Virus record (IMG/VR): IMGVR_UViG_3300046660_000716
Span: 62,001 to 126,000 of that record
DNA length: 64,000 nucleotides
Direction: 5' to 3' (one strand)
Below the pieces are notes generated by a model. That model did not search any database and had not been told where the DNA came from. It worked only from the letters and a program-made list of their open reading frames with translations. Shown here piece after piece: positions 6,599-61,000 of this stretch. A program made the position numbers and the translations under genes. The first letter of the stretch is position 1. Each line of letters starts with the position of its first letter.

Positions 6599-6628
6599 AA
6601 GAGGGGTCGCCGGACCCCCTCTTTTTTT
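6599..6628 (+). terminator. intrinsic terminator
   Basis: AAGAGGGGTC / GACCCCCTCTT stem plus T7. Confidence 0.8.
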
Positions 6629-6692: not shown

Positions 6693-7061
6693 ATGGAAAC
6701 ATTTCACTTCACGCGCTTGAACGAGTTTCACTTCAAGCGTCTGCTGGACTACGTGCGCGGTCAGAAGTTCCCGATCCGGTTCAAGACGTCCCGGGACGGC
6801 GTGCTGCACTTCACGGCGCACTTGGACCCAGCCTACGAACTTGACTTCCAGCTGACTGCTGCCGACGTCATGAGCGAAGCAGCCATTGGCGCCCTCGGCA
6901 TCACGAGCTACCTGGAGAAGATATCGTCCAACATGTGCAGGGCCGTCGAGGCGGCGTTCTGCATGCGCGAGATGTTTGACGAAAACGGCGTGGTCACCGA
7001 GCTCGGTAAGAACTTCCCGGATCTGATCAAGTCCACCATCGAGTATATCGATGGAAATTAG
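6693..7061 (+). CDS. hypothetical protein
   Basis: SD GAGGA; 122 aa. Confidence 0.75.
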   Translation: METFHFTRLNEFHFKRLLDYVRGQKFPIRFKTSRDGVLHFTAHLDPAYELDFQLTAADVMSEAAIGALGITSYLEKISSNMCRAVEAAFCMREMFDENGVVTELGKNFPDLIKSTIEYIDGN

Positions 7062-7536
7062 GTCCGGCGCCGGCTACCCGGCATCCGCGCTGAGCAACTT
7101 CGCCGCCCACTTCTTCGTCTTCGACGGCGTGGAGTGCGGATCGATGGAGGGTCTCCTGCAGGCGCTCAAGTTCGACAAGCCGCACGTCCAGGCGAACGTT
7201 TGCCGCATGACGGGCATGGCGGCCAAGATCCGCGGTAAGAAGCGCAACAAGGCGTGGCAGTCCAAGCAGACGCTCTGGTGGAAGGGAGCGGCCTACGACC
7301 GACACGGAGCCGAGTACCAGGCCCTGCTCGACAGCGCGTACGGCGCGCTCGCGGACCAGAACGAGGGCTTCCGCCGGGCGCTGCTCGCCACGGGAAAGTC
7401 CGTTTTCACCCACGCGCTCGGCAGCTCCAAGGAGTCCGAGACCGTCCTGACCGCCAGGGAGTTCTGCTCCCGGCTCCACGCGATCCGCAATCGCATAACG
7501 AAACCCTGTGATCCGCCGACGAGGAAAACCAAATGA
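7051..7536 (+). CDS. NADAR-family protein, T4 gp30.3 / AdfN-like ADP-ribosyl-guanine hydrolase
   Basis: ALSNFA..F..DGV..GSMEGLLQALK, TLWWKG, QNEGFRRALLAT, ETVLT..EF. This follows the recalled T4 gp30.3 pattern along its whole length. Confidence 0.85.
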   Translation: MEIRSGAGYPASALSNFAAHFFVFDGVECGSMEGLLQALKFDKPHVQANVCRMTGMAAKIRGKKRNKAWQSKQTLWWKGAAYDRHGAEYQALLDSAYGALADQNEGFRRALLATGKSVFTHALGSSKESETVLTAREFCSRLHAIRNRITKPCDPPTRKTK

Positions 7537-9074: not shown

Positions 9075-9445
9075 CCGTGAAGCTCATCAATCTGAGCCTG
9101 CATGTGCGGGACAACGGCCCGTGGAAGCGGCAAGCGGGCGGCGCGGCGTGGTCCGGCATGGAGTACCATCGCCAGCATATCATGGATGCGGTGAAGGCGC
9201 TGCACTCCTGCGGCGCCACGCTGATCCACATCCCGCTCGACCCGCTCTCGCTCGACCAGTCGAACGACGCGTTCGTGATGCACCGCTTCTTCGGCGACGA
9301 CCACCGCGTCTCTCCCGTCGTGCGCCGCCTGGCCGTCATCCCGGACGGGTCCGCGCGCATCGAGTGGTGGCAGGCGAACTCCAGCCGGCTGGTCTGCACC
9401 GACCAATTCACGCTCCCAGAAACCGAACCAGAAAGAACCGCATGA
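9071..9445 (+). CDS. hypothetical protein
   Basis: GTGA overlap; coupled to gyrA by ATGA. Confidence 0.65.
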   Translation: MTVKLINLSLHVRDNGPWKRQAGGAAWSGMEYHRQHIMDAVKALHSCGATLIHIPLDPLSLDQSNDAFVMHRFFGDDHRVSPVVRRLAVIPDGSARIEWWQANSSRLVCTDQFTLPETEPERTA

Positions 9446-11955
9446 CCAACATGGCAGACAGCAGCATCATCGACGGCGAACTGGAGGACATGTTCCGCCT
9501 CAAGTACACCGCCTTCGCCAAGTCCAGCAACGGCCGCGCCATCCCGGACGCGCGCGACGGCCAGAAGCCCGTGCACCGCCGCGTGCTCTTCCAGACCCTT
9601 CAGACCGCTCCGCCGAGCCGCGGCACCGTCAAGTGCGCCTCCATCGTGGGCAACGCGCTGGGGAACTACCACCCGCACGGCGACACGTCGGTGTACGACG
9701 CGATGTGCCGGATGGTGCGCCCCTACGCCAACAACGTCACCATGATCGTCGGCCAGGGCAACTTCGGCGCCATCGACGGCTCGTCCGCGGCCGCCATGCG
9801 CTACACCGAGGCCAAGCTGGACCCGCTGGCCAACTGGCTGATGATGGACGGCGTGGACGAGGGCGCGGTCCCGATGGCGCCGAACTACGACGGCCGCCTC
9901 ACGGAGCCGACGCTGCTGCCCGTGAAGATGCCCATGCTGCTCCTGAACGGCGTGCCTGCCGGCTCGATTGGGGTCGGCTTTGCCTCCGTCATCCCCTCCC
10001 ACAACGCGGCCGAGCTCGCGACCGCCTCGAAGTACGTGCTGCAGTGCATGGCGGCCGGCGTGGAGCCGCTGCTGGCGGACATCCTGACCGCGATGCCAGG
10101 CCCGGACTTCCCGACCGGCGGCACGGTGAGCTCCGCCGAGGAGATCGCCCGCATGTACGAGACGGGCCGCGGCCTGCTCAAGATCCGCGCCACCGCGAAG
10201 TGCGAGGACGGCGAGGGCCGCTCCGGCGGCCGCATCGTGATCACCTCCATCCCCTACGCCCAGAACACCACGTCACTGGTCGAGGAGATCATGGACGCCA
10301 AGCTGGGCAAGAAGCTGGCCGCCGGCAAGGGCCGCGCGGAGCCCCTGGTCCCGGAGGTCAAGGACGTCCGCGACGAGACCACCACAGACCGCGTGACCAA
10401 GCAGGTCAAGGTGCGCATGGTCATCGAGGTCAAGGCCGGCGAGGACCCGCGCGTGACGCTGGAGAAGCTCTACATCAACACGTCGCTGGAGACCACCTTC
10501 GCCGCCAACATGGTCGCGCTGGACGAGGAGGGCCAGCCGATCATGCTGACGCTCGTCGAGGCCATCACGCGCTGGGCCAACTTCCGCGCCGAGTGCGTGC
10601 GCCGCCAGGCCGCCGCCGACCTGGAGCGCGCCCGCGACCGGGAGCACGTCATCAACGGCCTCGTGGCCGCCATCCCGAAGATCGAGGACGTCATCTCCGT
10701 GGTCAAGGGGTCGGAGTCCGAGGAGGTCGCCAACTACCAGCTGCGCGTTCTCATTCCCTGCACCAGCAAGCAGGCGACCGCCATCCTGGCCATGCGCATC
10801 AGCCGCCTCACCGGCCTGCGCACCGAGGAGCTGGAGGCCGAGCGCGTCGAGCTGCACAACCGGGCGAACGACCTGATCGTGCTGCTGACATCCCAGGAGG
10901 CCGTCATCGCCCACATCGAGCGCGAGCTCGACGAGGCGTCAGCGAAGCTCGCCCGCCCGCGCCGCACGGTCATCGCCGAGTTCAGCGCCACGGGCGACCC
11001 GCGCGACCTGGTGGTCCCCGAGCACTGCCTGGTGCAGGTCACCGGCCGCGGCTACCTCAAGCGGTCGCAGGCCGACGAGTTCCGCACCCAGCTGCGCGGT
11101 GGCAAGGGCAACAAGAAGGCCACCGTCAAGGTCAAGGACGAGGACGTGCTGCAGTCGGTCGTCGGCTGCCACTCGCACGACCGCCTCTTCGCCGTGACGG
11201 ACGGGGGCGCGGTCGTGCGGCTTGAGGCCCACGAGGTGCCGGTCGTCAGCGCCGGCCGCCACGCCGCCAACCTCGGCTTCGAAGAGGGCGAGCTGGTCCG
11301 GGCGCTGCTGGTCAGCCCGTGGCCGGTGCCGGAGGAGGCGCAGGCCGTCTTCGCTACCACCGACGGCGAGGTCAAGCGCGTCGCCATGCCGGACCTGTCC
11401 AGCAAGATGACAAAGCGTCTGGTCTTCTTCCGCTCCGCGACGGAGAGCAACATCCGCGGCGGCATCGAGCTGCCGACCGGCGAGACCTCCGGCGACGTGT
11501 TCCTCGCGTCGGCGCACGGCCAGGGCACGCGCTTCGCCCCGAGCGAGGTCCGCCTGTCCAAGCGCGACAGCGGCGGGGTCCGCGGCATGGACCTCCGCGA
11601 GGACGACCGCCTGGTCTCCATCGGCCGCATCGACTCGGAGGACCAGCTGATCCTCTGCGTCACCAGCGACGGCATCGGCAAGCGCACCGCGTCGTCCGCG
11701 TTCCCCACCCAGGGCCGCGGCAACAAGGGCCGCATCCTGATCCGCCCGCGCCCCGGCGCCGAGCTGGTCCAGGCGCTGGTGGTCCGCGACGCCGACAGCG
11801 TGCTGATCGCGACGAAGGACGGCGTGACCGTCCGGATCCGCGTAGGCGAGGTCAAGGAGCTCGGCCGCTCAGCGATGGGCGTCAAGCTGATCGCCCTGAA
11901 CAAGGGCGACGTCGTCGTGTCCGCGGCGATCCTGCCGCTGGACGACGAGGAGTAA
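9442..11955 (+). CDS. gyrA: DNA gyrase subunit A
   Basis: RAIPDARDGQKPVHRR, YHPHGDTSVYD, GQGNFG, catalytic AAMRYTE, GPDFPTGG, GyrA-box QLRGGKG and beta-pinwheel blades. True start is ATG 9442. Confidence 0.95.
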   Translation: MTNMADSSIIDGELEDMFRLKYTAFAKSSNGRAIPDARDGQKPVHRRVLFQTLQTAPPSRGTVKCASIVGNALGNYHPHGDTSVYDAMCRMVRPYANNVTMIVGQGNFGAIDGSSAAAMRYTEAKLDPLANWLMMDGVDEGAVPMAPNYDGRLTEPTLLPVKMPMLLLNGVPAGSIGVGFASVIPSHNAAELATASKYVLQCMAAGVEPLLADILTAMPGPDFPTGGTVSSAEEIARMYETGRGLLKIRATAKCEDGEGRSGGRIVITSIPYAQNTTSLVEEIMDAKLGKKLAAGKGRAEPLVPEVKDVRDETTTDRVTKQVKVRMVIEVKAGEDPRVTLEKLYINTSLETTFAANMVALDEEGQPIMLTLVEAITRWANFRAECVRRQAAADLERARDREHVINGLVAAIPKIEDVISVVKGSESEEVANYQLRVLIPCTSKQATAILAMRISRLTGLRTEELEAERVELHNRANDLIVLLTSQEAVIAHIERELDEASAKLARPRRTVIAEFSATGDPRDLVVPEHCLVQVTGRGYLKRSQADEFRTQLRGGKGNKKATVKVKDEDVLQSVVGCHSHDRLFAVTDGGAVVRLEAHEVPVVSAGRHAANLGFEEGELVRALLVSPWPVPEEAQAVFATTDGEVKRVAMPDLSSKMTKRLVFFRSATESNIRGGIELPTGETSGDVFLASAHGQGTRFAPSEVRLSKRDSGGVRGMDLREDDRLVSIGRIDSEDQLILCVTSDGIGKRTASSAFPTQGRGNKGRILIRPRPGAELVQALVVRDADSVLIATKDGVTVRIRVGEVKELGRSAMGVKLIALNKGDVVVSAAILPLDDEE

Positions 11956-11962
11956 AACCACA

Positions 11963-11985
11963 CGGGGTATCCTCCGGGATGCCCC
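11963..11985 (+). terminator. hairpin after gyrA (no T-tract)
   Basis: CGGGGTATCC-tcc-GGGATGCCCCG; coordinates approximate. Confidence 0.4.
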
Positions 11986-12006
11986 GTTCACACACAGGAG
12001 CACCGA

Positions 12007-13026
12007 ATGAGCGACAAGAACTACAAGCAGATGACGACGCCGCAGCTGAGCAACGAGTACGCTCGTCGCCTCGGACCAGGTCACGTCTTTCTGAGCCCCG
12101 ACGAGGCCGGCTTCCGCAACGAGATGGTCGCCGCGCTGGAAAAGCAGGACGCCGTGGACCTGCCCGGCGAACTCGACGAGTACATGCAGATGCCGCTGAG
12201 CGCCCTGGAGAGCCTGGCCGTGCGCTACGACCGCCACTCCTACACCAGGCTCAGAGAAGTGCACGAATCGAGCCGGGGCAAGGAATCGGAGCTGCGCGCC
12301 GCCCACACCTTCCGCATGGCCATGGTCGCGCTGCTGAAGGGTCTGACGGTCGCGAAGGTCGAAGAGAATGTGGCTGAGGCCGGCAACCGCCGCATGACCC
12401 AGGCCGAGTCCGAGGCGATGGACGCGCCCACCGACATGACGGACGAGAAGGCTCGGCTGATGGCGGTGCAGATGAAGGCGCGCGCCAGGCCGGTGATCTT
12501 GAAGAGCTCCCTGCACAAGATCGTCGACACGCGACCGCGTCGCCGCCACGGGGGCGCGCCCCTTCCGAAATTCCTGCGGGAGGCGCTGAACCCGGCGTAC
12601 GGAGACGGCACGGTCGAAGGCGAGGTGCAGGTTCATATCGCGCAAAGTCGCAGAGCAGCCATCGAAGTTAAAGCCAACTTGACCTCCAGCGAGGTGCATC
12701 ACGTGGGGCTGGCAATCGACGCGCTGCTGTGCGGCTACTCGGGCGCATTCGTCGCGAGCGTCGACACCGACGACCGCGGCATCGTGATCGGCGCCGACTA
12801 CGAGGTCGGCTCGATCGAGTCCGACAGCAAGGGCGCTTCCGTGCGCGCCAGCGCCGAGGACGCCATGTACGACATCGTTTTCGACGACACCGAGGCGTCC
12901 GGCACGCTGAAGCTCGTGCGTCTGGTCCTGCTCGTGATGCTGCCGAACGGCCACGTCGCGCCGTGGGAGCCGCGGAGCACCAAGCCGTCCACCCGTGTGG
13001 CGTTCTGCAACCAGTACTACGCCTGA
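12007..13026 (+). CDS. hypothetical protein, C-terminal paralog family C domain
   Basis: TDDRGIVI..YDIVFD..LLVMLPNGHVAPW, shared with 19458 and 20822. Confidence 0.8.
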   Translation: MSDKNYKQMTTPQLSNEYARRLGPGHVFLSPDEAGFRNEMVAALEKQDAVDLPGELDEYMQMPLSALESLAVRYDRHSYTRLREVHESSRGKESELRAAHTFRMAMVALLKGLTVAKVEENVAEAGNRRMTQAESEAMDAPTDMTDEKARLMAVQMKARARPVILKSSLHKIVDTRPRRRHGGAPLPKFLREALNPAYGDGTVEGEVQVHIAQSRRAAIEVKANLTSSEVHHVGLAIDALLCGYSGAFVASVDTDDRGIVIGADYEVGSIESDSKGASVRASAEDAMYDIVFDDTEASGTLKLVRLVLLVMLPNGHVAPWEPRSTKPSTRVAFCNQYYA

Positions 13027-13059: not shown

Positions 13060-13572
13060 GTGAACACCGAATCCAATACCGAAGTGGCGGTCGCGTCCCT
13101 GAAGCTGTCCGGCCAGAAGTCCATGGTCGTCGCGTCCCTGTACTCGTGCCGGGAGTCCAACGGCTACAGCGTCCAGTCGGACGGCTGGCGCGCGCTGGTC
13201 GTGCCGACCGAATTCCTCGACCTGCTCTCCGAGGGCGACAGCCCCGTTTCCAAGACCGACGTCACCAACGGCCGCGAGCTGGACTTGGCCAACAATCCGA
13301 CCGCTTACGCCGACCAGATCGGCCTGGAGTTCGACACCACTCAGGACCAGTACGACGACTTCGAGCTGTGGCTGGCCGACGGCGAGTCCAAGCTGGGCGC
13401 CCTGTTCGGCCGCTGCGAGCTGCTGCCGAACGAAGTGACGAGCCTCGTCAGTATGTGCGGCGACGTCGAGCAGGCCGCCAAGATGGCGCTGTCGGCCGGC
13501 CAGGGCATGGCAAACACCCGCTTCACCGGAAAGCCCGTCTTCTTCGGCCTCTGCATCCACTGGGACAACTGA
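13060..13572 (+). CDS. hypothetical protein, paralog family A copy 1
   Basis: Aligns by eye with 14088..14609 over its full length. Confidence 0.8.
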   Translation: MNTESNTEVAVASLKLSGQKSMVVASLYSCRESNGYSVQSDGWRALVVPTEFLDLLSEGDSPVSKTDVTNGRELDLANNPTAYADQIGLEFDTTQDQYDDFELWLADGESKLGALFGRCELLPNEVTSLVSMCGDVEQAAKMALSAGQGMANTRFTGKPVFFGLCIHWDN

Positions 13573-13573
13573 T

Positions 13574-14086
13574 ATGAACTCCATCCAAGACGTATACAGT
13601 CAGCTCGACACCAACACGCTGGGGCACCTGCTGTCCGAGCGCGCCCCCGCGGTGGCGGCCTCCGTCACCGCCCATGCTGTGCACCGCCGTCGCGAGCTGC
13701 TGACGGCACTGCGCAAGCTGGCGGAGCCAGGCCGCGTCGATACCATGAGCATCATTCCGGTCCGGCGCGGCTCGTTTGTCGATGCTGTACTCGCAGTAAT
13801 CGGCACGCGCGTGATCGTGTCGCCGGTGGAACCGGACGAGGACGGCAATCTGAAGCTGCTGCCGGACTCGACAGGCCAGCTGATGATCGACGACGATCTG
13901 ATCTGCCTGCTCCCGGTCGTCGCAGCCTACGTCACTACCAAAGGCCACCTGACGCTCCTGGCCGACCACCCGGAGCGTGGCTGGATCGAGTTCGCCGTCA
14001 CCGCCGCGGAAGAGGACGATCACATCCTGCCGCTGGAGCCGAAGCAAGTCAAGATCATGTACAACCTGAACGTGAAAGAAGACTGA
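13574..14086 (+). CDS. hypothetical protein, paralog family B copy 1
   Basis: FVDAVLAVIGTRVIV..GQLMI..VAAYVTTKGHL. Confidence 0.8.
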   Translation: MNSIQDVYSQLDTNTLGHLLSERAPAVAASVTAHAVHRRRELLTALRKLAEPGRVDTMSIIPVRRGSFVDAVLAVIGTRVIVSPVEPDEDGNLKLLPDSTGQLMIDDDLICLLPVVAAYVTTKGHLTLLADHPERGWIEFAVTAAEEDDHILPLEPKQVKIMYNLNVKED

Positions 14087-14087
14087 C

Positions 14088-14609
14088 ATGGGCGCAGCAC
14101 AAATGGATCTGAACCTCGCCGAGCGCGACGACCTGAGCGTCGGCGAGACGCTCGACATCATCAACAGCGGCGAGATGGTCCTCGTCGCGGCGGTCATCTA
14201 CTCGATGACCGAGCAGACCGGCTGGACCACCGTGATCAACGGCATCGTCGTGGCCCTGGTGCCACCGACGTTTCTCGGCATGCTCACGCACGGCAGCGAC
14301 GTGCGCGTGCTGGGCATCGATTACAAGCTGGACCTGGTGAACGAGCGCACGGTCGCCTCGGACTACTGCGCCCTCGACTTCGAGAGCGAGCACGAGCAGG
14401 CCGAAGACTTCGCCACGTGGGTCACCGGGCAGGACAGCGCGTTCGAGGAGGCGCTTGGGATGGCCACCATGCTGCGCCGCGTAACCGGCACCGACGCCGA
14501 GTCGATGGCCCAGGCGTTCCACGACGTCCCGGAGGCGCTCGAGCACGCGCTCGGAACCGAGCTGGCGGACTGCGTCCTGCCGTTCGCCCTGTGCGCAAAC
14601 TACGGCTAA
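14088..14609 (+). CDS. hypothetical protein, paralog family A copy 2
   Basis: Aligns by eye with 13060..13572. Confidence 0.8.
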   Translation: MGAAQMDLNLAERDDLSVGETLDIINSGEMVLVAAVIYSMTEQTGWTTVINGIVVALVPPTFLGMLTHGSDVRVLGIDYKLDLVNERTVASDYCALDFESEHEQAEDFATWVTGQDSAFEEALGMATMLRRVTGTDAESMAQAFHDVPEALEHALGTELADCVLPFALCANYG

Positions 14610-14621
14610 GGGGGATTCGTC

Positions 14622-15017
14622 ATGCATACAGTGACCCAGGACATGCTGTCCCTAATTCGCCCGGAGCATTTGAACCCGCTGGTACGGCGTGTGATCGCTG
14701 AGCTGGGGCAGTACGTCACGATCAAGATGGAGGACGAAGTCGACGACATCGCCGACGAAACCAACGAGTACGAGTTCCCCGAGCGCACCGCAAATACGCT
14801 GCTTTGCGGCGGCGAGGACTCGTGGGGTGCGCTGGTCGGCGCCTTCGTCCTCGAGGGCGAATTTGTGATCGCAGCCAACTTCGGCGACGACGGCGTGGTC
14901 TTCTACTCGCTGTCCGGAACCGAATCACCGCTGTGCCACGTCAGCAATGTGCTCTCAGCCAAGGACATCATCATCGGCCGATCGCTCGACGAGCTCAACC
15001 CGGAACTGGCAGAATGA
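14622..15017 (+). CDS. hypothetical protein, paralog family B copy 2
   Basis: LVRRVIAELGQYVTI..SWGALVGAFVLEGEFVIAANF. Confidence 0.8.
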   Translation: MHTVTQDMLSLIRPEHLNPLVRRVIAELGQYVTIKMEDEVDDIADETNEYEFPERTANTLLCGGEDSWGALVGAFVLEGEFVIAANFGDDGVVFYSLSGTESPLCHVSNVLSAKDIIIGRSLDELNPELAE

Positions 15018-15433
15018 GCGCCACTGAGACCATCAGCCTGGGAACCGGCATCGCCGAGGGGAACAGGACGCGGCTCGTCGAGTCCGTGCTGAACTACCTC
15101 GGCGACAAGGTGATCATCACCACGGACGACGAGGGACTCAAAACCTACGAGATGGCCACGCCGCACCGCGGGCGCCTCATGGTCAGCGAGGAAGGCGCAT
15201 GGGGCGAGGTCATCGGCGCCTACACGGAGAAGGGCCACCTGGTCATGGTGGCCCGGTTCAGCGACCCGGAGTCGCTGGAAGTCCAGGATGACCCGCTCCG
15301 CGGCGTGTTCACCTTTTCGATCACGAAGATCCACGAGTACTATCCGACCGCGTTCACCCGGCCGCGCGTGCTGAAGGGTCACGAGATCTGCGTCTTCAGC
15401 ACGATCGCCGAAATCTACCCGGAGGCCGCGTGA
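15014..15433 (+). CDS. hypothetical protein, paralog family B copy 3
   Basis: LVESVLNYLGDKVII..GRLMV..AWGEVIGAYTEKGHLVMVARF; ATGA overlap. Confidence 0.8.
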   Translation: MSATETISLGTGIAEGNRTRLVESVLNYLGDKVIITTDDEGLKTYEMATPHRGRLMVSEEGAWGEVIGAYTEKGHLVMVARFSDPESLEVQDDPLRGVFTFSITKIHEYYPTAFTRPRVLKGHEICVFSTIAEIYPEAA

Positions 15434-15840
15434 GCTGGCAGCAGGGGCGGCTCGTCACGCTACAGGAGATACTGGAATCGGCCACGTCGGTCCTGCCGTC
15501 GCGCTTTCAGATCGCCGATCCAGTGTGGGTCTGGGTCAACGAGGAGCACGGCTTCGAGCGCCCGATCGAGGGAGTGATAGTAGGCGCGTCGTTCGGCCTG
15601 CTCGGACGGATGTCCTACAGCATCGCTTTCCGCATCGGGACTGGACCGTACTACGCCGTCGCCACCGGCGTGCGCGGCTGGCTCACATCCCCGGGTGAAT
15701 CCCTATCGCCGGAGGACGGCCTTGTCGAAGTCACGAAAATCGAGGGCGCCGTGAGGAGTGTGAAGGCCGTCGAGCGCCGCGCTTCTATGCGCATCGTACC
15801 ACCTCCCGGCACGCCGCCGGAACCGGAGGAACCGGATTAG
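15430..15840 (+). CDS. hypothetical protein
   Basis: GTGA overlap; last gene before a terminator. Confidence 0.7.
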   Translation: MSWQQGRLVTLQEILESATSVLPSRFQIADPVWVWVNEEHGFERPIEGVIVGASFGLLGRMSYSIAFRIGTGPYYAVATGVRGWLTSPGESLSPEDGLVEVTKIEGAVRSVKAVERRASMRIVPPPGTPPEPEEPD

Positions 15841-15843
15841 ACG

Positions 15844-15871
15844 GATGCGGCCGAGCGCCGCATCTTTTTTT
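15844..15871 (+). terminator. intrinsic terminator
   Basis: GATGCGGC-cgagc-GCCGCATC plus T7. Confidence 0.85.
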
Positions 15872-15898
15872 CACGAGTTGAGCCCCTCCGCTTATGAG

Positions 15899-19457: not shown

Positions 19458-20393
19458 ATGAAGATCGTATCCACCAACAACACCCTGCCCAACACCCACA
19501 AGCTGGCGGCCCAGTCCACCATGACCGACCCGCGCTTCCCGAACGGCGAGCTGCAGGCGATCGCGGCGGCCCTGGGCTCGTCCTTCCCGGCCCACCTGGA
19601 GAGCGGCGTCCAGGAGACGATGCAGAAGGTCGCGACCATGCCCAAGCTGCGCGTCTGGGCTGACAAATCGGCCCTGTCTGCCAGCGTCGTGCGCTTCCTG
19701 ACCCACGCATGCGGCGCCACGCTGTACTCCAAGCTGAACGCCGGCCGCAGCCCCGTCTTCGTGCGCAACAACAAGACCGAGGACATCGGCCTGGCCTACG
19801 ACGTGGCGTACTCGGCCCACGGCGTGTCCGACGCGCAGGACGAGACCATCCGCAACGCATGCGGCGTCGAGGGCACGAACGGCGTGACCGTGATCGAAGA
19901 CGACGGCAAACACTTCGTCGCAGCCATCCATGTGATGGCCCTGCTGCCGACCGGCTTCGTCGCTGCGTGGCCGCTGGTGGAGTGCACGTTCGGCAAGGAC
20001 GATGACGAGGAAGAGCCGACCAACCTGATGAGCGCCATCATCCGCACGGTCACCACCTCGGCCCGCAAGATCAATGCTGACGCCTTCCGCGCCCAGTACT
20101 GGAACGACGCCGAAGGCAACATCGTCGTGGCCGGCCCGCACCTGACCAACACGGGTAAAAACATGACCGTGATCGGCCGGCTGGAGGGCATGGAGGTCGC
20201 CCGCTTCGACGCCATCGAGCTGTGCTGCGAGGCCCACGCGGAGCAGCACAAGGAAAGCCTGATGGACGCGTATCGCGGCCAGATCGCCAACACGCTGGGC
20301 CTGGACGCGGCTCAGTGGGCGGCGCTGGAGGTCGATCTGGTGAAGAGCGACACCGCGGTGGCGGAGACCTGCACGTCCCGCCACGTGCACTAG
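19458..20393 (+). CDS. hypothetical protein, family C domain
   Basis: TEDIGLAYDVAYSAHG..VMALLPTGFVAAW. Confidence 0.8.
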   Translation: MKIVSTNNTLPNTHKLAAQSTMTDPRFPNGELQAIAAALGSSFPAHLESGVQETMQKVATMPKLRVWADKSALSASVVRFLTHACGATLYSKLNAGRSPVFVRNNKTEDIGLAYDVAYSAHGVSDAQDETIRNACGVEGTNGVTVIEDDGKHFVAAIHVMALLPTGFVAAWPLVECTFGKDDDEEEPTNLMSAIIRTVTTSARKINADAFRAQYWNDAEGNIVVAGPHLTNTGKNMTVIGRLEGMEVARFDAIELCCEAHAEQHKESLMDAYRGQIANTLGLDAAQWAALEVDLVKSDTAVAETCTSRHVH

Positions 20394-20821: not shown

Positions 20822-21637
20822 ATGACAATCACCCAAGTAGTAGCATCGAACCCGAAGCCAATTCGCTTCCTGGTAAGCGCCAGCGCCGAGCAGGATCCGC
20901 TGGGCCGCGCCTCCGCGATGGCCATGATCGCCCAGCCGGGTCACCTCCCCCAGTGGCTGAGCTACGCTGACATCATGGTCGGCAGCCTGGTGGCGGCGAA
21001 GCACTTCGAGCTCGACAACGACATGCCGCCTGGGATCGAGCCGATGCCCGGCGAGTACATGCTGGCGGAGCACACCCTGAATCTGGTCCTCGCGAAGAAG
21101 CTGAGCGCTTTGCCGGCATCGTCGGTGTTCGGCGAGGACATCATGTTCGTGCAGAACGAGGGCTCGGACGACGTCGGCATCGTGATCGACATGGCCGCGC
21201 GCATCTACGGGCTGGAAAACGGAAACGACGAGAATAACGAGTTCGATCTGATCATCGAGCGCGACGGCAATTACCTCGGCTTCCAGACCCTGCTGCTGGT
21301 GGCTCTTCCGAACGGCGCCGTCGATCGCTGGGACGCCGACAAGGTCAGCCACATCGAAGGCGAGGACGGGCTGGAGCTGTACCGCGCCCAGATCTGGGTC
21401 GTGGGCGACGACATCGCCGCGCCGACCCCGCCGGCCGACGTCCAGCTGCCGAAGAACTGGGCCGTGAGCGGAACCGACGTCAACGGCGAGTTCTACACCC
21501 ACATCTACAACAGCATGGACGAGGAAACCGCCAAGGCCACTTTCATCTCCGAGATGGGCACCGAGGGCGACGAGGCCGGCGCGGCTGCGCAGATCCTGGG
21601 CGTCGTCAGCTCCTACACCGAGATCATGTCTGCATAA
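20822..21637 (+). CDS. hypothetical protein, family C domain
   Basis: SDDVGIVIDMAARIYG..FDLIIE..LLVALPNGAVDRW. Confidence 0.8.
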   Translation: MTITQVVASNPKPIRFLVSASAEQDPLGRASAMAMIAQPGHLPQWLSYADIMVGSLVAAKHFELDNDMPPGIEPMPGEYMLAEHTLNLVLAKKLSALPASSVFGEDIMFVQNEGSDDVGIVIDMAARIYGLENGNDENNEFDLIIERDGNYLGFQTLLLVALPNGAVDRWDADKVSHIEGEDGLELYRAQIWVVGDDIAAPTPPADVQLPKNWAVSGTDVNGEFYTHIYNSMDEETAKATFISEMGTEGDEAGAAAQILGVVSSYTEIMSA

Positions 21638-55127: not shown

Positions 55128-57683
55128 ATGGCAACCACTCCACAGAACGGCCGCAACCGCGGCGGCAAGCGCAACAATCCGGCCGAGAAGGCGCTCGGCC
55201 GGGCGGAGCGCTCTGCCGACAGCGCCGATCAGCTGCTGACCGGCGGGATCGAACCCGAGCTGCAGGGTGCGCGCGACCTCGACAGCGTGGTCCGCACCAT
55301 CGCCCGGCAGGTGGGCGCGGCCAACACGCGCCTGACCGGCGGCAACACGCTGGAGACCATGTCCCGCCTCAAGCAGGACACGCTGCTCTCCACCCCACTC
55401 GTGCAGCAGAACGCCTCCAACCAGATCAAGATCACCGACGGCGGCGCGACGCTGAAGGACGCGCTGGACGAGGTCGAGTCCAGCATGATCAACGAGCTCT
55501 TCGCCACGGAGAAGGGTCGGCTGGACGATTACCAGACCTACGCGCAGATCGCCGACCTGATCACCCAGGCGGGCGAGTCCATCCAGGCGTTCACCGACAA
55601 TATCGTGAGCCCGGACGACTTCACCAAGCGCGATGTGGCAGTGTTCTACGACGGCACCGACGAAGAGGGCAAGCTGATCAAGCAGGTCAAGGCCAAGGCC
55701 GACGACCTGATCAAGAAGTACATGCTGGAGGACCGCGCGGAGGAGGCCATCACCAAGGCGCTGGTCAAGGGCGACTACTTCATGGTCATCCTGAACCTAC
55801 GCCAGGAGCTCGAGGGCATCCTGAACGAGCAGGGCGCGCTGGTGGAGAACGCCCAGGCCCTGCTGGACGAGCACCGCGTGTCGCAGAAGTTCGAGGCGCA
55901 GCACGTGCCGAACCTGGAGGACCCGGACGTCAAGGGCCTCATGGAAATCATGAAGCTCGAGATCAAGGCGAGCGAGGCCAAGGGCGCCAAGGACGGAGCC
56001 CTGACCGAGAGCACGCTGGTCGCCGAGTCGTCCAAGTTCCGCGAGGAGCTGGCCGCCTACTTCAACGAGCTGCTCGTGGTCAACGAGGACGCGTCGGGCC
56101 TGGTCGGCAAGCAGGCCATGTCGATGAAGTTCGCGCAGGACCTGCCGAGCAAGCAGCGCGTCCGGGCCGGCGGCAAGATGGTCGCCCCCGGCGAGGGCAG
56201 GGGCGCCAGCCTCGCGGGCTCCAAGGTCACCGGCTCGGTGGTGAAGATGGTCCCTCCGGAGAACGTCGTCAAGCTGTACCAGGACGACACGCTGTTCGGC
56301 TACTACTTCATCGAGCTGTCCGGCCCGGACATCGCCGACTTCGCGCGCCGCGGCACGATGGACCAGACCGCCATGGTCCGCGCCATCGACCAGAACCTGT
56401 CGGTGCGCGCGCTGGGCGGCAACACGGGCGCCGTGCCGAAGGGCAAGGACGCGCTGATCAGCCGCATCATCATCAAGACGCTGAGCACGAAGCTGGGCAA
56501 CTCGAAGTACCTGAAGGACCACGAGGAGTTCGCCTCCGACGCGTACGCGATCCTGTCGCGCGCCCGCCGGGAGCGCCGCCGCGCCACCTTCACGTACGTG
56601 GCCCCGGACCAGATGGTCCACTTCACGCCGAACGGCTCTACGGCCTACGGCGAGTCCGTGCTGAGCCGCATCAAGTTCCTGTCCAAGCTGTACCTGGGCG
56701 CGATGACCAACGCGTTCATGCGCAACTCCATCCGGCGCCCCGAGCGCCTGGTGTGGTACATCGACATCGGCACGGACAACGACGGCAGCAACTCGGTCCA
56801 GAACTTCATCCGCACGATCAAGCAGCGCGAGGTCAAGTTCTCGAACCTGCGGGACATCACGACCACGATCAACCAGATCGGCGAGTTCCACGACTTCTAC
56901 GTGCCGACCTACAACGGAGAGCGCCCCGTCGACGTTGAGACGCTGAACATGGGCGCCGCCGCCGAGGTCGACAACGCCTACCTGGAGTACCTGCGCAAGG
57001 CCATCATCGGCGGCACGGGCGTCCCTGCGGCGTACCTGGGCTACTCCGAGGAGGTGGCGTTCGCCCGCTCCCTGACGATGGACAACGGCCGCTTCCTGCG
57101 CCGCGTGATCCGCAACCAGAAGCACTTCGGTGCGGCCATGACCCGCGTGCTGCAGATCCTGTGGCGCAACGAGTACATGAGCCTGGAGGAGCTGGTCGGC
57201 AAGACCAAGGACCAGTCCGCCGACGACGTGGAGCGGGCCAGCAAGGAGCGCAGCGACAAGGAGAACGCCAAGGCCGGCGTCGACCGAGCTCTGGCAGACA
57301 TCGACATCTCGAAGATCGTCGTGCGCTACCCTAGCCCGGCCACGCTGAACATGACCAACCTGGCCGACGCGATGAACCAGGGCCAACCCGTGGCCGAGTT
57401 CATCACCGACGTGGTCGGCTCCGGCGAGGAGGATGACGTCAAGAACGAGCTGAAGAAGCAGGTGCTGCAGGACCTGATGCCTCAGATCCACTGGTCGAAG
57501 TACCACGACATGCTGGACAACGCACGCAAGGCCATCGAGAAGAAGAAGGCCGGCGAATCGACGACGCCGGCCGCCGGTGGCGGCGACGGTCTCGAAGGGG
57601 GCGGCGACGGCCTCGGTGCTGCCGGCATGGATGCGGGCGGCGACGGCGGAGACACAGCCGAAGCCGACTTCCCTCCTCCGTAA
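55128..57683 (+). CDS. portal vertex protein (T4 gp20-like)
   Basis: RRPERLVWYIDIG, DFYVP..GER..DVETL, YLRKAIIGGTGVPAAYL correspond to T4 gp20 PERRVFYIDVG, EDYWLP and YF.KKL..L.VP.SR. Confidence 0.85.
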   Translation: MATTPQNGRNRGGKRNNPAEKALGRAERSADSADQLLTGGIEPELQGARDLDSVVRTIARQVGAANTRLTGGNTLETMSRLKQDTLLSTPLVQQNASNQIKITDGGATLKDALDEVESSMINELFATEKGRLDDYQTYAQIADLITQAGESIQAFTDNIVSPDDFTKRDVAVFYDGTDEEGKLIKQVKAKADDLIKKYMLEDRAEEAITKALVKGDYFMVILNLRQELEGILNEQGALVENAQALLDEHRVSQKFEAQHVPNLEDPDVKGLMEIMKLEIKASEAKGAKDGALTESTLVAESSKFREELAAYFNELLVVNEDASGLVGKQAMSMKFAQDLPSKQRVRAGGKMVAPGEGRGASLAGSKVTGSVVKMVPPENVVKLYQDDTLFGYYFIELSGPDIADFARRGTMDQTAMVRAIDQNLSVRALGGNTGAVPKGKDALISRIIIKTLSTKLGNSKYLKDHEEFASDAYAILSRARRERRRATFTYVAPDQMVHFTPNGSTAYGESVLSRIKFLSKLYLGAMTNAFMRNSIRRPERLVWYIDIGTDNDGSNSVQNFIRTIKQREVKFSNLRDITTTINQIGEFHDFYVPTYNGERPVDVETLNMGAAAEVDNAYLEYLRKAIIGGTGVPAAYLGYSEEVAFARSLTMDNGRFLRRVIRNQKHFGAAMTRVLQILWRNEYMSLEELVGKTKDQSADDVERASKERSDKENAKAGVDRALADIDISKIVVRYPSPATLNMTNLADAMNQGQPVAEFITDVVGSGEEDDVKNELKKQVLQDLMPQIHWSKYHDMLDNARKAIEKKKAGESTTPAAGGGDGLEGGGDGLGAAGMDAGGDGGDTAEADFPPP

Positions 57684-57990: not shown

Positions 57991-58011
57991 TGTGTTCCTC
58001 TCTTCCTGTGG

Positions 58012-58038: not shown

Positions 58039-61000
58039 TTACGCGGTGGTCCAGGTGCCGAAGCCGCCAGTGATGTGCCAGACGTAGGTGCTGGCACCGG
58101 TCTGCACGCACGTCAGCATGACGCTGGCGTTGGTCTCCGTCGCGGTCGAGTTCGTCAGAGTGCCCGCCGCCGTGGAGTCCTGTATGGTATCAGTTCCCAC
58201 GGCTTTGATCACGAAGTTCTGAGCGTTGACCTTGAAGAAGCGCAGGGTCTGGCCCACCATCGTCGAGCCTGCAGGCAGGGTGTCGGTGATGGCGCCCGCT
58301 GCACCGCGGTTGGTCAGCATCGAGCCGACGTCCGTCGACAGCACCGTGTAGGATGCGGTTTTCGGGTTGTCGACCAGGGCCGCAGCCGCGCCGTCCGTGA
58401 TGCCGTAGCCGGCCAGGGTGGTCGGCTTGCCGGTGATGCTGGCGAAGGCAGGGGTCACGGTCACATTCGCAGCCAGGACCAGGCGGCCCTTGGAGTCGAC
58501 CGTGAAGGTCGGGATCTGGGTCGCCGAGCCGTAGGCCGCCGCCGCCACCGCCGTGTTGGCCAGAGTCAGAGCGCCCGTCGCCGCAGCCGAGCCGTCGAAG
58601 TTCGTCGTCCAGGTGGCGTCGCCGGTGATCGAGATCGCCCGAGCGGTCGCCAGCTTGGTCGCCGTGTCGGCGTTGCCCGTGACGTTGCCCGTGACGTTGC
58701 CGGTCACGTTGCCCGCGACGTTGCCCTGCAGGTTCATCTGGGCGGTGCCCACCGAGCCGCTGAAGACCTCGCCGGTGTTCGACGCGTCCGGGATGAACGT
58801 GAAGAAGCCGGTGGAGTCGTCGAAGCCGAAGTAGCCCACCTTCGCGGTGGTGCCGTTGTGCCAGCGGTACTCGATGCCGCGGTCCTTGTTGTCGTCGACG
58901 GTCGGAGCCGTGTCGCCGCCCAGGGTGAAGATAGGGTCGTCGATGGTCACGGTCGTCGAGTTGAACGTGGTCGTGGTGCCGTTGAACGTCACGTTGCCCG
59001 TGAAGGTGGTGGTGCCGTTCACGACCAGCGACGCGGCGGTCAGCGCGCCCGCGGTCGTCAGGTTGGCCGAGCCAGCCCAGGTGGACAGCGCGGTGTTCTC
59101 CACGTTGCCCAGTCCGACGGCCGCGGCGTTCAGCGCTGCCATCACCTTGTCGCCGCGGTAGTACTGCGCCGCGGTGCCAGCAGCGATGAGCGGCTGCGAG
59201 TCAGTGATGCCGTATCCGGCCAGGGTGGTCGGCAGGCCCGTGATGTTGGCGAAGGCCGGGGTCACGGTCACGTTGGCCGCCAGGACCAGGCGGCCCTTGG
59301 AATCGACCGTGAAGGTCGGGATCTGGGAGCCGGAGCCGTAGGCCGCCGCCGCCACGGCGGTGTTGGCCAGGGTCAGCGCGCCGGTGGCGTTGGCCGAGCC
59401 GTCGAAGCTGGTGGTCCAGGTGGCGTCGCCGGTGATCGAGACGCTGCGGGCGGTCGCCAGCTTGGTCGCGGTCGAGGCGTTGCCCGTGAAGCCGGCCGTC
59501 GTGTTGATGGTCAGCTTGTTGTTGACGTCGTCGTAGGCCACCGAGATGTTGGTGCCGGAGACGATGTCCAGGCGCTCGGCCGTGGTGTACGAGATCTGCG
59601 CGCTGGTGCCGTCGCCGATCGACAGCGTGTGCGTGTGGTTGGACAGCGCCGCGTCGGTGATGCCGTAGCCGGCCAGGGTGGTCGGCTTGGACGTGATGCT
59701 TGAGAACAGCGGCGTGATCGTCACCGGCGCGCCGACGCTGATGATGCGGCCCTTGGAGTCGACCGTGTACGGCGTGACCGCGGTCGCCGTCGCGTTGTAC
59801 GTGCCGGCGGCGACGCCCGATGCGGCCAGCGTCATGGCGCCCGTGGCTGCGGCGGTGCCGTCGAAGTTCGTCGTCCAGGTGCCGTCGCCGGTCATGGAGA
59901 TCGCGCGGGTCGTCGCCAGAGCCGTGGCGGTCGAGGCGTTGCCCGTGAAGCCTGCGGTCGTGTTGACCGTGAGCTTATTGGTGGCGTCGTCGTAGACCAG
60001 CGAGATGTTCGTGCCGGACACGATGTCCAGGCGATCGCTGGTCAGGTAGTTGATCTGCGTCGCGGTCCCGTCGCCGATCTTCAGCGCGTGGGTGTGCACC
60101 AGCGGCGCAGCGTCGGTGATGCCGTAGCCGCCCAGCGTGGTCGGCAGACCCGTGATGTTGGCGAACGCCGGGGTCACGGCGGTGCTACCGGCGACGGTCA
60201 GGCGACCCTTGGAGTCGACCGTGAAGGTCGGAACCAGGGCGCCCGAGCCGTAGGAGGCCGCAGCGACGCCGGTGTTGGCCAGCGTGCCGGCAGCCGTGGC
60301 GTTGGCCGAGCCGTCGAAGTTGGTGGTCCAGGACACGTCGCCGGTCATCGAGATCGAGCGGGCGTTGGCCAGCTTGGTCGCGGTGTCGGCATTGCCGGTG
60401 AAGCTCGCGCTCGAACCGATCGTGATCTTGTTGTTGACGTCGTCGTAGGCCACCGTGATGTTGCTGCCCGACACGATGTCCAGGCGGTCGCTGGTGAGGT
60501 AGTTCACCCGCGCGGCGGTCCCGTCGCCGATCGTCAGCGCGTGGGTGTGCACCAGGGCCGCGGCGTCGGTGATGCCGTAGCCGCCCAGCGTGGTGGGCTT
60601 GCCGGTCACGCTGGCGAAGGCCGGGGTGATCGTGACCGCGGCGCCGGTTGCCACGATGCGGCCCTTGGCGTCCACGGTGAACGGCGTGATCGCGGTCGCC
60701 GAGTTGTTGTACTGGGCGGCGGCGACGCCGGTGTTGGCCAGCGTCAGGGCGCCGGTCGCGGCAGCGGTGCCGTCAAAATTCGTCGTCCAGGTGGCGTCGC
60801 CGGTGATCGAGATCGCACGGCTGGTGGCCAGAGCGGTCGCAGTCGAGGCGTTACCGGTCACGGCGCCCGTCAGGTTGCCGGTGACGTTGCCCAGCAGGTT
60901 AGCCTCCAGGGTGCCCACCGCGCCGGAGAAGACCTCGCCGGCATTCACCGCGTCCGGGATGAAGGTCATGCGGCCGGTGCTTCGGTCGAAGCCGAAGAAG

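What the first reader, a model, noticed from the sequence alone, without database searches (positions are those of the whole stretch)
13060..15433. A-B-A-B-B array: a duplicated two-gene module of two unknown protein families after gyrA
Seen, family A (13060 vs 14088): GQKSMVVASLYSCRESNGYSVQSDGWRALVVPTEFLDLLSEG vs GEMVLVAAVIYSMTEQTGWTTVINGIVVALVPPTFLGMLTHG, and ELDLANNPTAYADQIGLEFDTTQDQYDDFELW vs KLDLVNERTVASDYCALDFESEHEQAEDFATW; both end in F.LC. Seen, family B (13574, 14622, 15014): FVDAVLAVIGTRVIV / LVRRVIAELGQYVTI / LVESVLNYLGDKVII, then VAAYVTTKGHL / VGAFVLEGEF / IGAYTEKGHL. Genes are tightly coupled (gaps of 1, 1, 12 and -4 nt), end at one terminator (15844) and are highly diverged at DNA level. 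Inference: an old, retained duplication of an A+B functional pair, such as a heteromeric host-takeover or anti-defence complex diversified for different targets. I recognise neither family.
Basis: partly seen in the sequence, partly recalled or inferred. Interest (0 to 1): 0.75.

Follow-up and report, generated by a model that had tools for sequence, protein, structure and literature searches.

The report
Duplicated orphan gene pair in jumbo phage
Five small back-to-back genes in a giant soil-phage genome are ancient copies of two unrelated protein families found nowhere else, which is a real but fairly ordinary lineage-specific gene expansion whose function remains unknown.

Summary
Window 13060-15433 carries five tightly packed + strand genes in the order A1-B1-A2-B2-B3. 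A1 and A2 are clear paralogs (BLASTP E 1e-14). B2~B3 (1e-9) and B1~B3 (4e-6) link the three B genes; B1~B2 is linked only through B3. A and B are unrelated to each other.

It sits right after a DnaB-like helicase and has no B gene beside it.

The host genome is a 259-kb jumbo myovirus from a rhizosphere metagenome. It has split multisubunit RNA polymerase genes and a terminase at most 39% identical to any GenBank phage.

Neither family has a homolog. The A profile found only its own three members among 1.84 billion representatives. B found nothing in word-indexed, tblastn and pattern searches. Pfam, PHROGs, NCBIfam, PADLOC and PDB sequence searches gave nothing.

Predicted structures were too poor to assign a fold, and the A1+B1 complex prediction returned "no answer".

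An old duplication of an A-B gene pair is the most economical reading of the gene order. A heteromeric anti-defence complex is untested. Interest is low to moderate.

The parts
9442..11955 (+). GyrA-like subunit of the phage type II topoisomerase (837 aa). It lies upstream in the same transcription direction.
   Evidence: Pfam DNA_topoisoIV plus DNA_gyraseA_C on the identical Logan gene call. tblastn gives about 33% identity to GyrA genes. The GyrB-like partner lies at genome 61763-64192 (phrog_543).
11962..11987 (+). Strong RNA hairpin just after the gyrA stop, without a U-tract. It may be a partial terminator or a processing or stability element that sets off the downstream 7-gene block.
   Evidence: 11-bp stem, -22.4 kcal/mol, z -4.0 against shuffles. 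The terminator scan did not call it because there is no T-run.
12007..13026 (+). up339, a 339-aa orphan protein and the first gene of the block. Its C-terminal ~85 residues weakly resemble two proteins encoded 6-8 kb downstream (19458-20393 and 20822-21637).
   Evidence: No Pfam, PHROG, NCBIfam or PADLOC hit. hhalign E 7.8e-5, probability 61%. tblastn E 0.018 and 0.52.
13060..13572 (+). A1, family A paralog, 170 aa, pI 4.2.
   Evidence: BLASTP to A2 E 1e-14 and to A3 E 6e-7. GC3 0.93. Good Shine-Dalgarno sequence (GAAGGAG).
13574..14086 (+). B1, family B paralog, 170 aa, with a ~57-aa N-terminal extension absent from B2 and B3.
   Evidence: BLASTP to B3 E 4e-6. Leave-one-out HMM gives the top non-training hit in the genome, E 0.04. 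The extension has the coding signature (GC3 0.84). It starts 1 nt after the A1 stop.
14088..14609 (+). A2, family A paralog, 173 aa, pI 4.05.
   Evidence: It starts 1 nt after the B1 stop.
14622..15017 (+). B2, family B paralog, 131 aa, pI 4.2.
   Evidence: BLASTP to B3 E 1e-9. Leave-one-out E 0.005. It has its own Shine-Dalgarno sequence (GGGGGA).
15014..15433 (+). B3, family B paralog, 139 aa. It is the least diverged (central) member of the family.
   Evidence: ATGA start/stop overlap with B2.
15430..15840 (+). dn136, a 136-aa orphan protein, the last gene before the terminator. It is not related to A or B.
   Evidence: GTGA overlap with B3. hhalign against the B profile is not significant. 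No family hits.
15843..15872 (+). Intrinsic terminator: a 9-bp GC-rich stem followed by T7.
   Evidence: Terminator scan. Fold -15.7 kcal/mol. The previous + strand terminator-like site with a T-run outside a gene is at 6603-6618; one search also listed two intragenic matches at 14840-14861.

Best explanation
The region is a block of genuine, co-transcribed, translationally coupled genes (up339, A1, B1, A2, B2, B3, dn136). It lies between a hairpin after the phage gyrA-like gene and one intrinsic terminator, inside the replication and DNA-metabolism region of an isolated lineage of jumbo myovirus.

Shown: A (three copies in the genome) and B (three copies) are two unrelated, lineage-restricted protein families.

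Inferred from gene order: an ancestral A-B gene pair was duplicated in tandem and one B was duplicated again. This happened long ago, since the copies differ by 2-4 substitutions per site and no DNA similarity is left. All copies have since been kept as intact genes.

Inferred weakly about function: the residues conserved across each family are mostly Gly, Pro, Ala, Leu, Val, Asp and Trp. There is no catalytic-looking constellation, and the proteins are small and mostly acidic. They most likely act as non-enzymatic binding proteins, that is accessory (non-core) factors made together with the phage's DNA-handling enzymes. Each paralog would have diverged toward a different partner or target. 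Whether A binds B is open.
For: - Paralogy.
- A and B are unrelated.
- No further members in the genome.
- Coding signature and independent gene calls.
- Coupling distances and ribosome-binding sites.
- Hairpin and terminator.
- No DNA repeats.
- Deep ML distances.
- Replication-type context: GyrA-like and GyrB-like genes, split PolB, UvsX, and a DnaB-like helicase next to A3.
- Conserved columns lack His/Ser/Cys-type catalytic sets.
- Acidity: pI is 4.05-4.2 for A1, A2 and B2. Only 8% of a crude set of 231 predicted proteins of this genome fall below pI 4.5, and 2.6% fall below 4.2.
- Paralog clusters are frequent in this genome, with about 9 families in about 300 genes, several of them tandem.
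- Paralog families are documented for phiKZ-like giant phages (PMC5694885).
- More than half the genes of a nucleus-forming jumbo phage are dispensable accessory genes (bioRxiv 10.64898/2025.12.19.695335).
Against: - There is no positive evidence for any molecular activity.
- The structure models are poor: A1 pLDDT 44 and B3 pLDDT 58.
- Fold searches gave nothing above noise.
- Complex prediction gave no answer.
- Three-sequence alignments are too shallow to exclude an enzymatic site.
- Three-taxon distances cannot show that A and B were duplicated in the same event.
- Stacking of diverged alleles acquired from related phages by recombination would give the same picture as in-genome duplication.
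- Transcription-unit boundaries come from pattern scans only.
Confidence: 0.5

Rival explanations
1. Anti-defence or host-takeover heteromer. A and B form a complex, and each duplicated pair is specialised to neutralise a different host defence or host protein.
For: - The proteins are small, acidic and lineage-specific, and sit in a non-structural region.
- The genes are tightly coupled.
- The paralogs have diversified.
- Accessory genes of jumbo phages are widely suspected of such roles.
Against: - No similarity to any defence-related model (PADLOC) or to any known family.
- The A1+B1 prediction gave no answer.
- A3 has no B partner.
- Coupling is equally tight across B1->A2 as across A1->B1, so spacing does not mark A-B pairs.
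Confidence: 0.2
2. Accessory factors of the phage's own DNA enzymes. Family A proteins would be adaptors or regulators of replication and topology enzymes (DnaB-like helicase for A3, type II topoisomerase for A1 and A2), with B as a co-factor at the topoisomerase locus.
For: Both A loci lie directly downstream of a DNA enzyme gene on the same strand. A3 starts 51 nt after the DnaB-like helicase gene (PF20307 E 8e-20). A1 and A2 lie in the block after gyrA.
Against: - Both regions are dense with replication genes, so proximity is expected by chance.
- A 339-aa gene and a hairpin separate gyrA from A1.
- There is no similarity to known helicase loaders or gyrase modulators.
Confidence: 0.2
3. 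Virion-internal or ejected proteins, like the tandem paralog families of phiKZ-like and SPN3US heads.
For: Giant phages related by their RNA polymerase and terminase carry large tandem paralog families of head proteins of unknown function (PMC5694885).
Against: - The array sits in a replication-gene operon, tens of kb from the nearest recognised structural gene (window 55128-57683) and further from the sheath, baseplate and terminase genes.
- No match to PF12699 or to any virion PHROG.
Confidence: 0.05
4. Non-functional remnants: duplicated genes drifting toward loss, or spurious ORFs of a GC-rich genome.
For: No homologs anywhere. Predicted folds have low confidence.
Against: - All six copies are intact at comparable lengths despite 2-4 substitutions per site.
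- They show a strong frame-specific GC3/GC2 signature equal to that of gyrA.
- Start/stop coupling is conserved.
- Hydrophobic and Gly/Pro columns are conserved.
Confidence: 0.05

Closest known systems
Tandem paralog families of giant phiKZ-like phages (for example SPN3US paralog families A, B and C; phiKZ inner-head proteins, Pfam PF12699)
   Same: Multi-copy, highly diverged, mostly tandem families of unknown function in a jumbo myovirus with phage-encoded multisubunit RNA polymerase. Copy number is lineage-specific. This genome has about 9 such families.
   Different: There is no sequence relation. Here two unrelated families alternate as a repeated pair. The location is a replication operon rather than a head-gene region, and there is no evidence of virion association.
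Small accessory ORFs flanking the topoisomerase and replication genes of T4-like phages (for example the Gp30.3 family, PF08010, which this same stretch also encodes at 7051-7536)
   Same: Short, tightly packed, translationally coupled genes of unknown role, transcribed with DNA-metabolism genes.
   Different: A and B are not members of any T4 accessory family, and they are duplicated.
Small beta-barrel binding modules (Tudor, WYL, Sm, SH3-like) as a possible fold class for family B
   Same: The weak best matches of the B3 model are repeatedly of this kind: 53BP1 Tudor, RapA Tudor, PafBC, CapW, BrxR WYL, RimM and Hfq.
   Different: All matches are at noise level (Foldseek E >= 0.36, TM <= 0.41, VIA Z <= 3.4) on a model of pLDDT 58. 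This is a lead only, not an assignment.

Membership tests
phiKZ/SPN3US head paralog families (PF12699 and relatives) | Sequence match to the family profile | tested here: not met
   Pfam and PHROGs scans of all five proteins gave no hit at E < 0.001.
phiKZ/SPN3US head paralog families (PF12699 and relatives) | Presence in the virion or head | not testable with these tools
   This needs proteomics of purified particles. The genomic context is non-structural.
Generic 'lineage-specific tandem paralog array of a jumbo phage' | Two or more significantly similar genes adjacent on one strand of a genome over 200 kb | tested here: met
Known anti-phage defence or counter-defence protein families | Match to a PADLOC or other curated model | tested here: not met
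   PADLOC best E 0.053 at 9.7 bits. NCBIfam found none.
DNA-mimic anti-restriction proteins (Ocr/ArdA type) | Strongly acidic surface | tested here: inconclusive
   pI is 4.05-4.2 for A1, A2 and B2, but 4.95-5.6 for B1, B3 and A3. Acidity is common in this proteome (median pI 5.6).
DNA-mimic anti-restriction proteins (Ocr/ArdA type) | Sequence or fold similarity to a known mimic | tested here: not met
   No PDB sequence hit and no fold hit for B3. The A model is unusable.
Two-gene heteromeric module (obligate A-B partners) | A and B always adjacent wherever they occur | tested here: not met
   A3 has no B-like neighbour and the genome has no fourth B. No other genomes are available to test.
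Two-gene heteromeric module (obligate A-B partners) | Physical A-B interaction | tested here: inconclusive
   Complex prediction returned 'no answer', score 0.00, with both folds uncertain.
Tudor/WYL/SH3-like small beta-barrels (family B) | Structural match above noise (TM >= 0.5 or Z >= 8) | tested here: not met
   Best TM 0.41 and best Z 3.4.

The most novel reading that the evidence does not exclude
A and B are the two subunits of a previously unseen phage-encoded complex. The module has been duplicated and diversified so that each version addresses a different target, either host immunity proteins or the phage's and host's DNA-topology and helicase machinery. A3 would be a stand-alone version dedicated to the helicase.
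Probability: 0.12. Interest if true: 0.55.

Novelty: new member of a known kind. Interest (0 to 1): 0.3.

Why it matters
The array is a clean example of how jumbo phages build accessory gene content by duplicating and diversifying small genes. It is unusual in that two unrelated genes appear to have been copied together as a unit.

If A and B prove to be partners, the three A and three B copies would give a ready-made natural specificity series for studying how a phage binding module diversifies.

At present the main value is descriptive. It marks two orphan families, and an isolated jumbo-phage lineage from the rhizosphere, for follow-up when relatives or an isolate become available.

Tried and rejected
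1. Homolog searches:
- Word-indexed search of 5.8 billion clusters with A1, with B3 and with the B profile found only the genome's own proteins.
- An exhaustive hmmsearch of the A profile on 1.84 billion representatives found only A1, A2 and A3. The one extra hit was a 1139-aa repeat protein (P0005, E 7e-5 summed over six short repeats sharing an acidic D-F-x-x-W-V-x-x-Q-like helix motif). I rejected it as a motif and repeat artefact.
- tblastn of B3 and B1 against GenBank phages found nothing.

2. Family libraries: Pfam, PHROGs, NCBIfam, PADLOC and PDB sequences all gave nothing.

3. Structure:
- AF2 gave A1 pLDDT 44 and B3 pLDDT 58.
- Foldseek on PDB, BFVD and AFDB, VIA-wide, and Atlas shape searches were all at noise level.
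- Language-model look-alikes were uninformative.

4. Complex prediction for A1+B1 gave no answer.

5. Other ideas tested and rejected:
- A3's N-terminal extension is a piece of B: hhalign not significant.
- up339, dn136, D3 or the two small genes after D3 are B-like: not significant.
- A related to B: not significant.
- A shared leader motif CACACANAGGAG: only 2 sites, no more than chance.
- An RNA element in the region: none in Rfam.

6. Read mapping showed only the same phage: about 200x in the source rhizosphere run, and identical low-depth fragments in two other runs. No variant or relative was seen.
Full report
**What is there**

The window is bases 62001-126000 of a 259,338-bp virus record with direct terminal repeats, with about 65% G+C. 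Between 13060 and 15433 the + strand carries five ORFs of 170, 170, 173, 131 and 139 codons. They are separated by 1, 1, 12 and -4 nt.

Each has the genome's coding signature: G+C of 0.80-0.93 at third codon positions and 0.36-0.43 at second positions, the same as gyrA. An independent gene caller on a second assembly of the same phage, a 91-kb Logan contig, calls exactly these genes.

**Is the similarity real?**

- A1 and A2 align over 157 residues at 27% identity, E 1e-14.
- B2~B3 gives E 1e-9 and B1~B3 gives E 4e-6.
- B1~B2 is not significant directly.

In leave-one-out tests, a profile of two members was scored against all 3187 six-frame ORFs of the genome. It always ranked the third member first among non-training ORFs: A 2e-11, 3e-11 and 4.5e-7; B 9.5e-9, 0.005 and 0.04.

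The A and B profiles are unrelated to each other (hhalign E 0.19). No DNA repeat survives between the copies. ML distances are 2.3-4.2 substitutions per site.

A third A gene (A3, 204 aa, ending in the same F-G-[LI]-C motif) lies at genome 40100-40714 on the minus strand, about 35 kb upstream of the array and outside the window. It starts 51 nt after a DnaB-like helicase gene (PF20307 E 8e-20).

A3 is followed, with a 1-nt gap, by an unrelated 324-aa orphan gene. Neither that gene nor the two small genes after it resemble B. The genome has no fourth B.

**Anatomy of the unit**

- gyrA (9442-11955) ends just before a strong hairpin (11962-11987; -22.4 kcal/mol, z -4.0) that has no U-tract.
- Seven coupled genes follow: up339, A1, B1, A2, B2, B3 and dn136.
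- A canonical intrinsic terminator lies at 15843-15872.
- The previous + strand terminator-like site with a T-run outside a gene is at 6603-6618; one search also listed two intragenic matches at 14840-14861. The block may therefore be read through from the gyrA message or form its own sub-unit.
- Coupling is as tight across B1->A2 as across A1->B1, so spacing does not mark A-B pairs.
- No Rfam family matches the region. The minus-strand ORFs are the usual shadows of a GC-rich coding strand.

**The genome**

PHROG matches identify several split RNA-polymerase beta-type subunits, a split family-B DNA polymerase, UvsX, SbcC, a GroEL-like chaperonin, tail sheath, a baseplate-wedge-like protein, terminase, and a GyrB-like topoisomerase II large subunit. 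This is a jumbo myovirus of the broad phiKZ/PBS1-AR9 kind.

The lineage is isolated. The terminase is at most 39% identical to any GenBank phage, and the only IMG/VR hit is 28% identical. gyrA is about 33% identical to anything in GenBank phage records.

The phage comes from a rhizosphere metagenome, at about 200x in the source run. Identical low-depth fragments occur in two other rhizosphere runs, and no variants were seen.

**Search for relatives and for function**

Family A has no member outside this genome among 1.84 billion representatives of about 15 billion proteins. The single extra hit is a repeat-protein artefact.

Family B found nothing in the word-indexed profile search, in tblastn against GenBank phages or in IMG/VR and JGI pattern scans.

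Pfam, PHROGs, NCBIfam, PADLOC and PDB sequences gave no hit.

With only three sequences per alignment, AlphaFold2 gave pLDDT 44 for A1 and 58 (pTM 0.54) for B3. The B3 model matched nothing above noise. Its weak matches recur among small beta-barrels (Tudor, WYL, Sm), which I record only as a lead.

Language-model look-alike searches were uninformative. The complex prediction for A1+B1 returned "no answer", and I use it neither for nor against binding.

**What can be inferred**

The residues conserved across each family are mainly structural (Gly, Pro, Ala, Leu, Val, Trp, a few Asp, and one C-terminal Cys in A). There is no obvious catalytic set. A1, A2 and B2 have pI 4.05-4.2; in a crude set of 231 predicted proteins of this genome, 8% fall below pI 4.5 and 2.6% below 4.2.

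The genes sit among replication and DNA-metabolism genes, not structural ones. I therefore favour non-enzymatic binding proteins that act as accessory factors, diversified after duplication.

I cannot separate a host-directed role (anti-defence or takeover) from a role with the phage's own helicase and topoisomerase. I give these about equal weight. The second is suggested only by the position of both A loci directly behind such enzymes, in regions where such neighbours are expected anyway.

**How unusual is it?**

An all-against-all comparison of about 300 predicted genes finds about 9 paralog families in this genome, several of them tandem pairs.

Large tandem paralog families of unknown function are documented in phiKZ-like giant phages (PMC5694885). 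More than half the genes of a nucleus-forming jumbo phage are dispensable accessory genes (bioRxiv 10.64898/2025.12.19.695335). In a lineage this isolated, orphan status of accessory genes is expected.

The one less common feature is that two unrelated genes alternate, as if copied together.

**Verdict**

- The duplication reading is plausible but not provable with three sequences per family.
- The heteromer and anti-defence reading is untested, and the solitary A3 weakens the idea of obligate A-B pairing.
- Nothing was left out as a referred step.

Noticed in passing
Outside the window: genome G000:C1:40100-40714 (-), which is L003:1387-2001 (-): A third family A paralog (A3, 204 aa, with a ~45-60 aa N-terminal extension). 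It lies 51 nt downstream of a DnaB-like helicase gene (PF20307) and is followed by an unrelated 324-aa orphan gene with a 1-nt gap. There is no B gene nearby.
   Followed up: yes
window 12007-13026, 19458-20393 and 20822-21637 (+): The C-terminal ~85 residues of the 339-aa gene upstream of A1 weakly resemble two adjacent paralogous orphan proteins 6-8 kb downstream (hhalign E 7.8e-5, probability 61%; shared L-P-x-G-x-V-A-x-W motif). This may be a third local paralog family.
   Followed up: partly
window 58039-62892 (-): A 1617-codon minus-strand ORF contains about 3.6 copies of a 459-nt (153-aa) tandem repeat at 74% identity (59200-60852). The repeat produces a spurious 'family' of small + strand ORFs. 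GC skew changes sign near 58000, where the coding strand switches.
   Followed up: partly
window 11962-11987 (+): A very stable 11-bp hairpin lies immediately after the gyrA stop codon, with no U-tract (-22.4 kcal/mol, z -4.0). It may be an attenuator, a processing site or an RNA-stability element.
   Followed up: partly
window 7051-7536 (+): A clear homolog of T4 Gp30.3 (PF08010, E 1.6e-55) lies in the stretch between the 6603-6618 terminator-like site and gyrA. It is one of the few accessory genes here with relatives in other phages.
   Followed up: no
whole genome G000 (259,338 bp): The phage is an isolated jumbo-myovirus lineage. It has split multisubunit RNA polymerase genes, a GroEL-like chaperonin, and a two-subunit gyrase-like topoisomerase. 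Its terminase is at most 39% identical to any GenBank phage. No tRNA genes were found in the 64-kb window. It is abundant (about 200x) in one rhizosphere metagenome.
   Followed up: partly
genome 136979-139057, 164452-165832 and 217143-226537: Further tandem or clustered paralog families: a 329/347-aa pair at E 1e-39, a 271/186-aa pair, and a four-member family around 217-226 kb. Duplication is a general habit of this genome.
   Followed up: no
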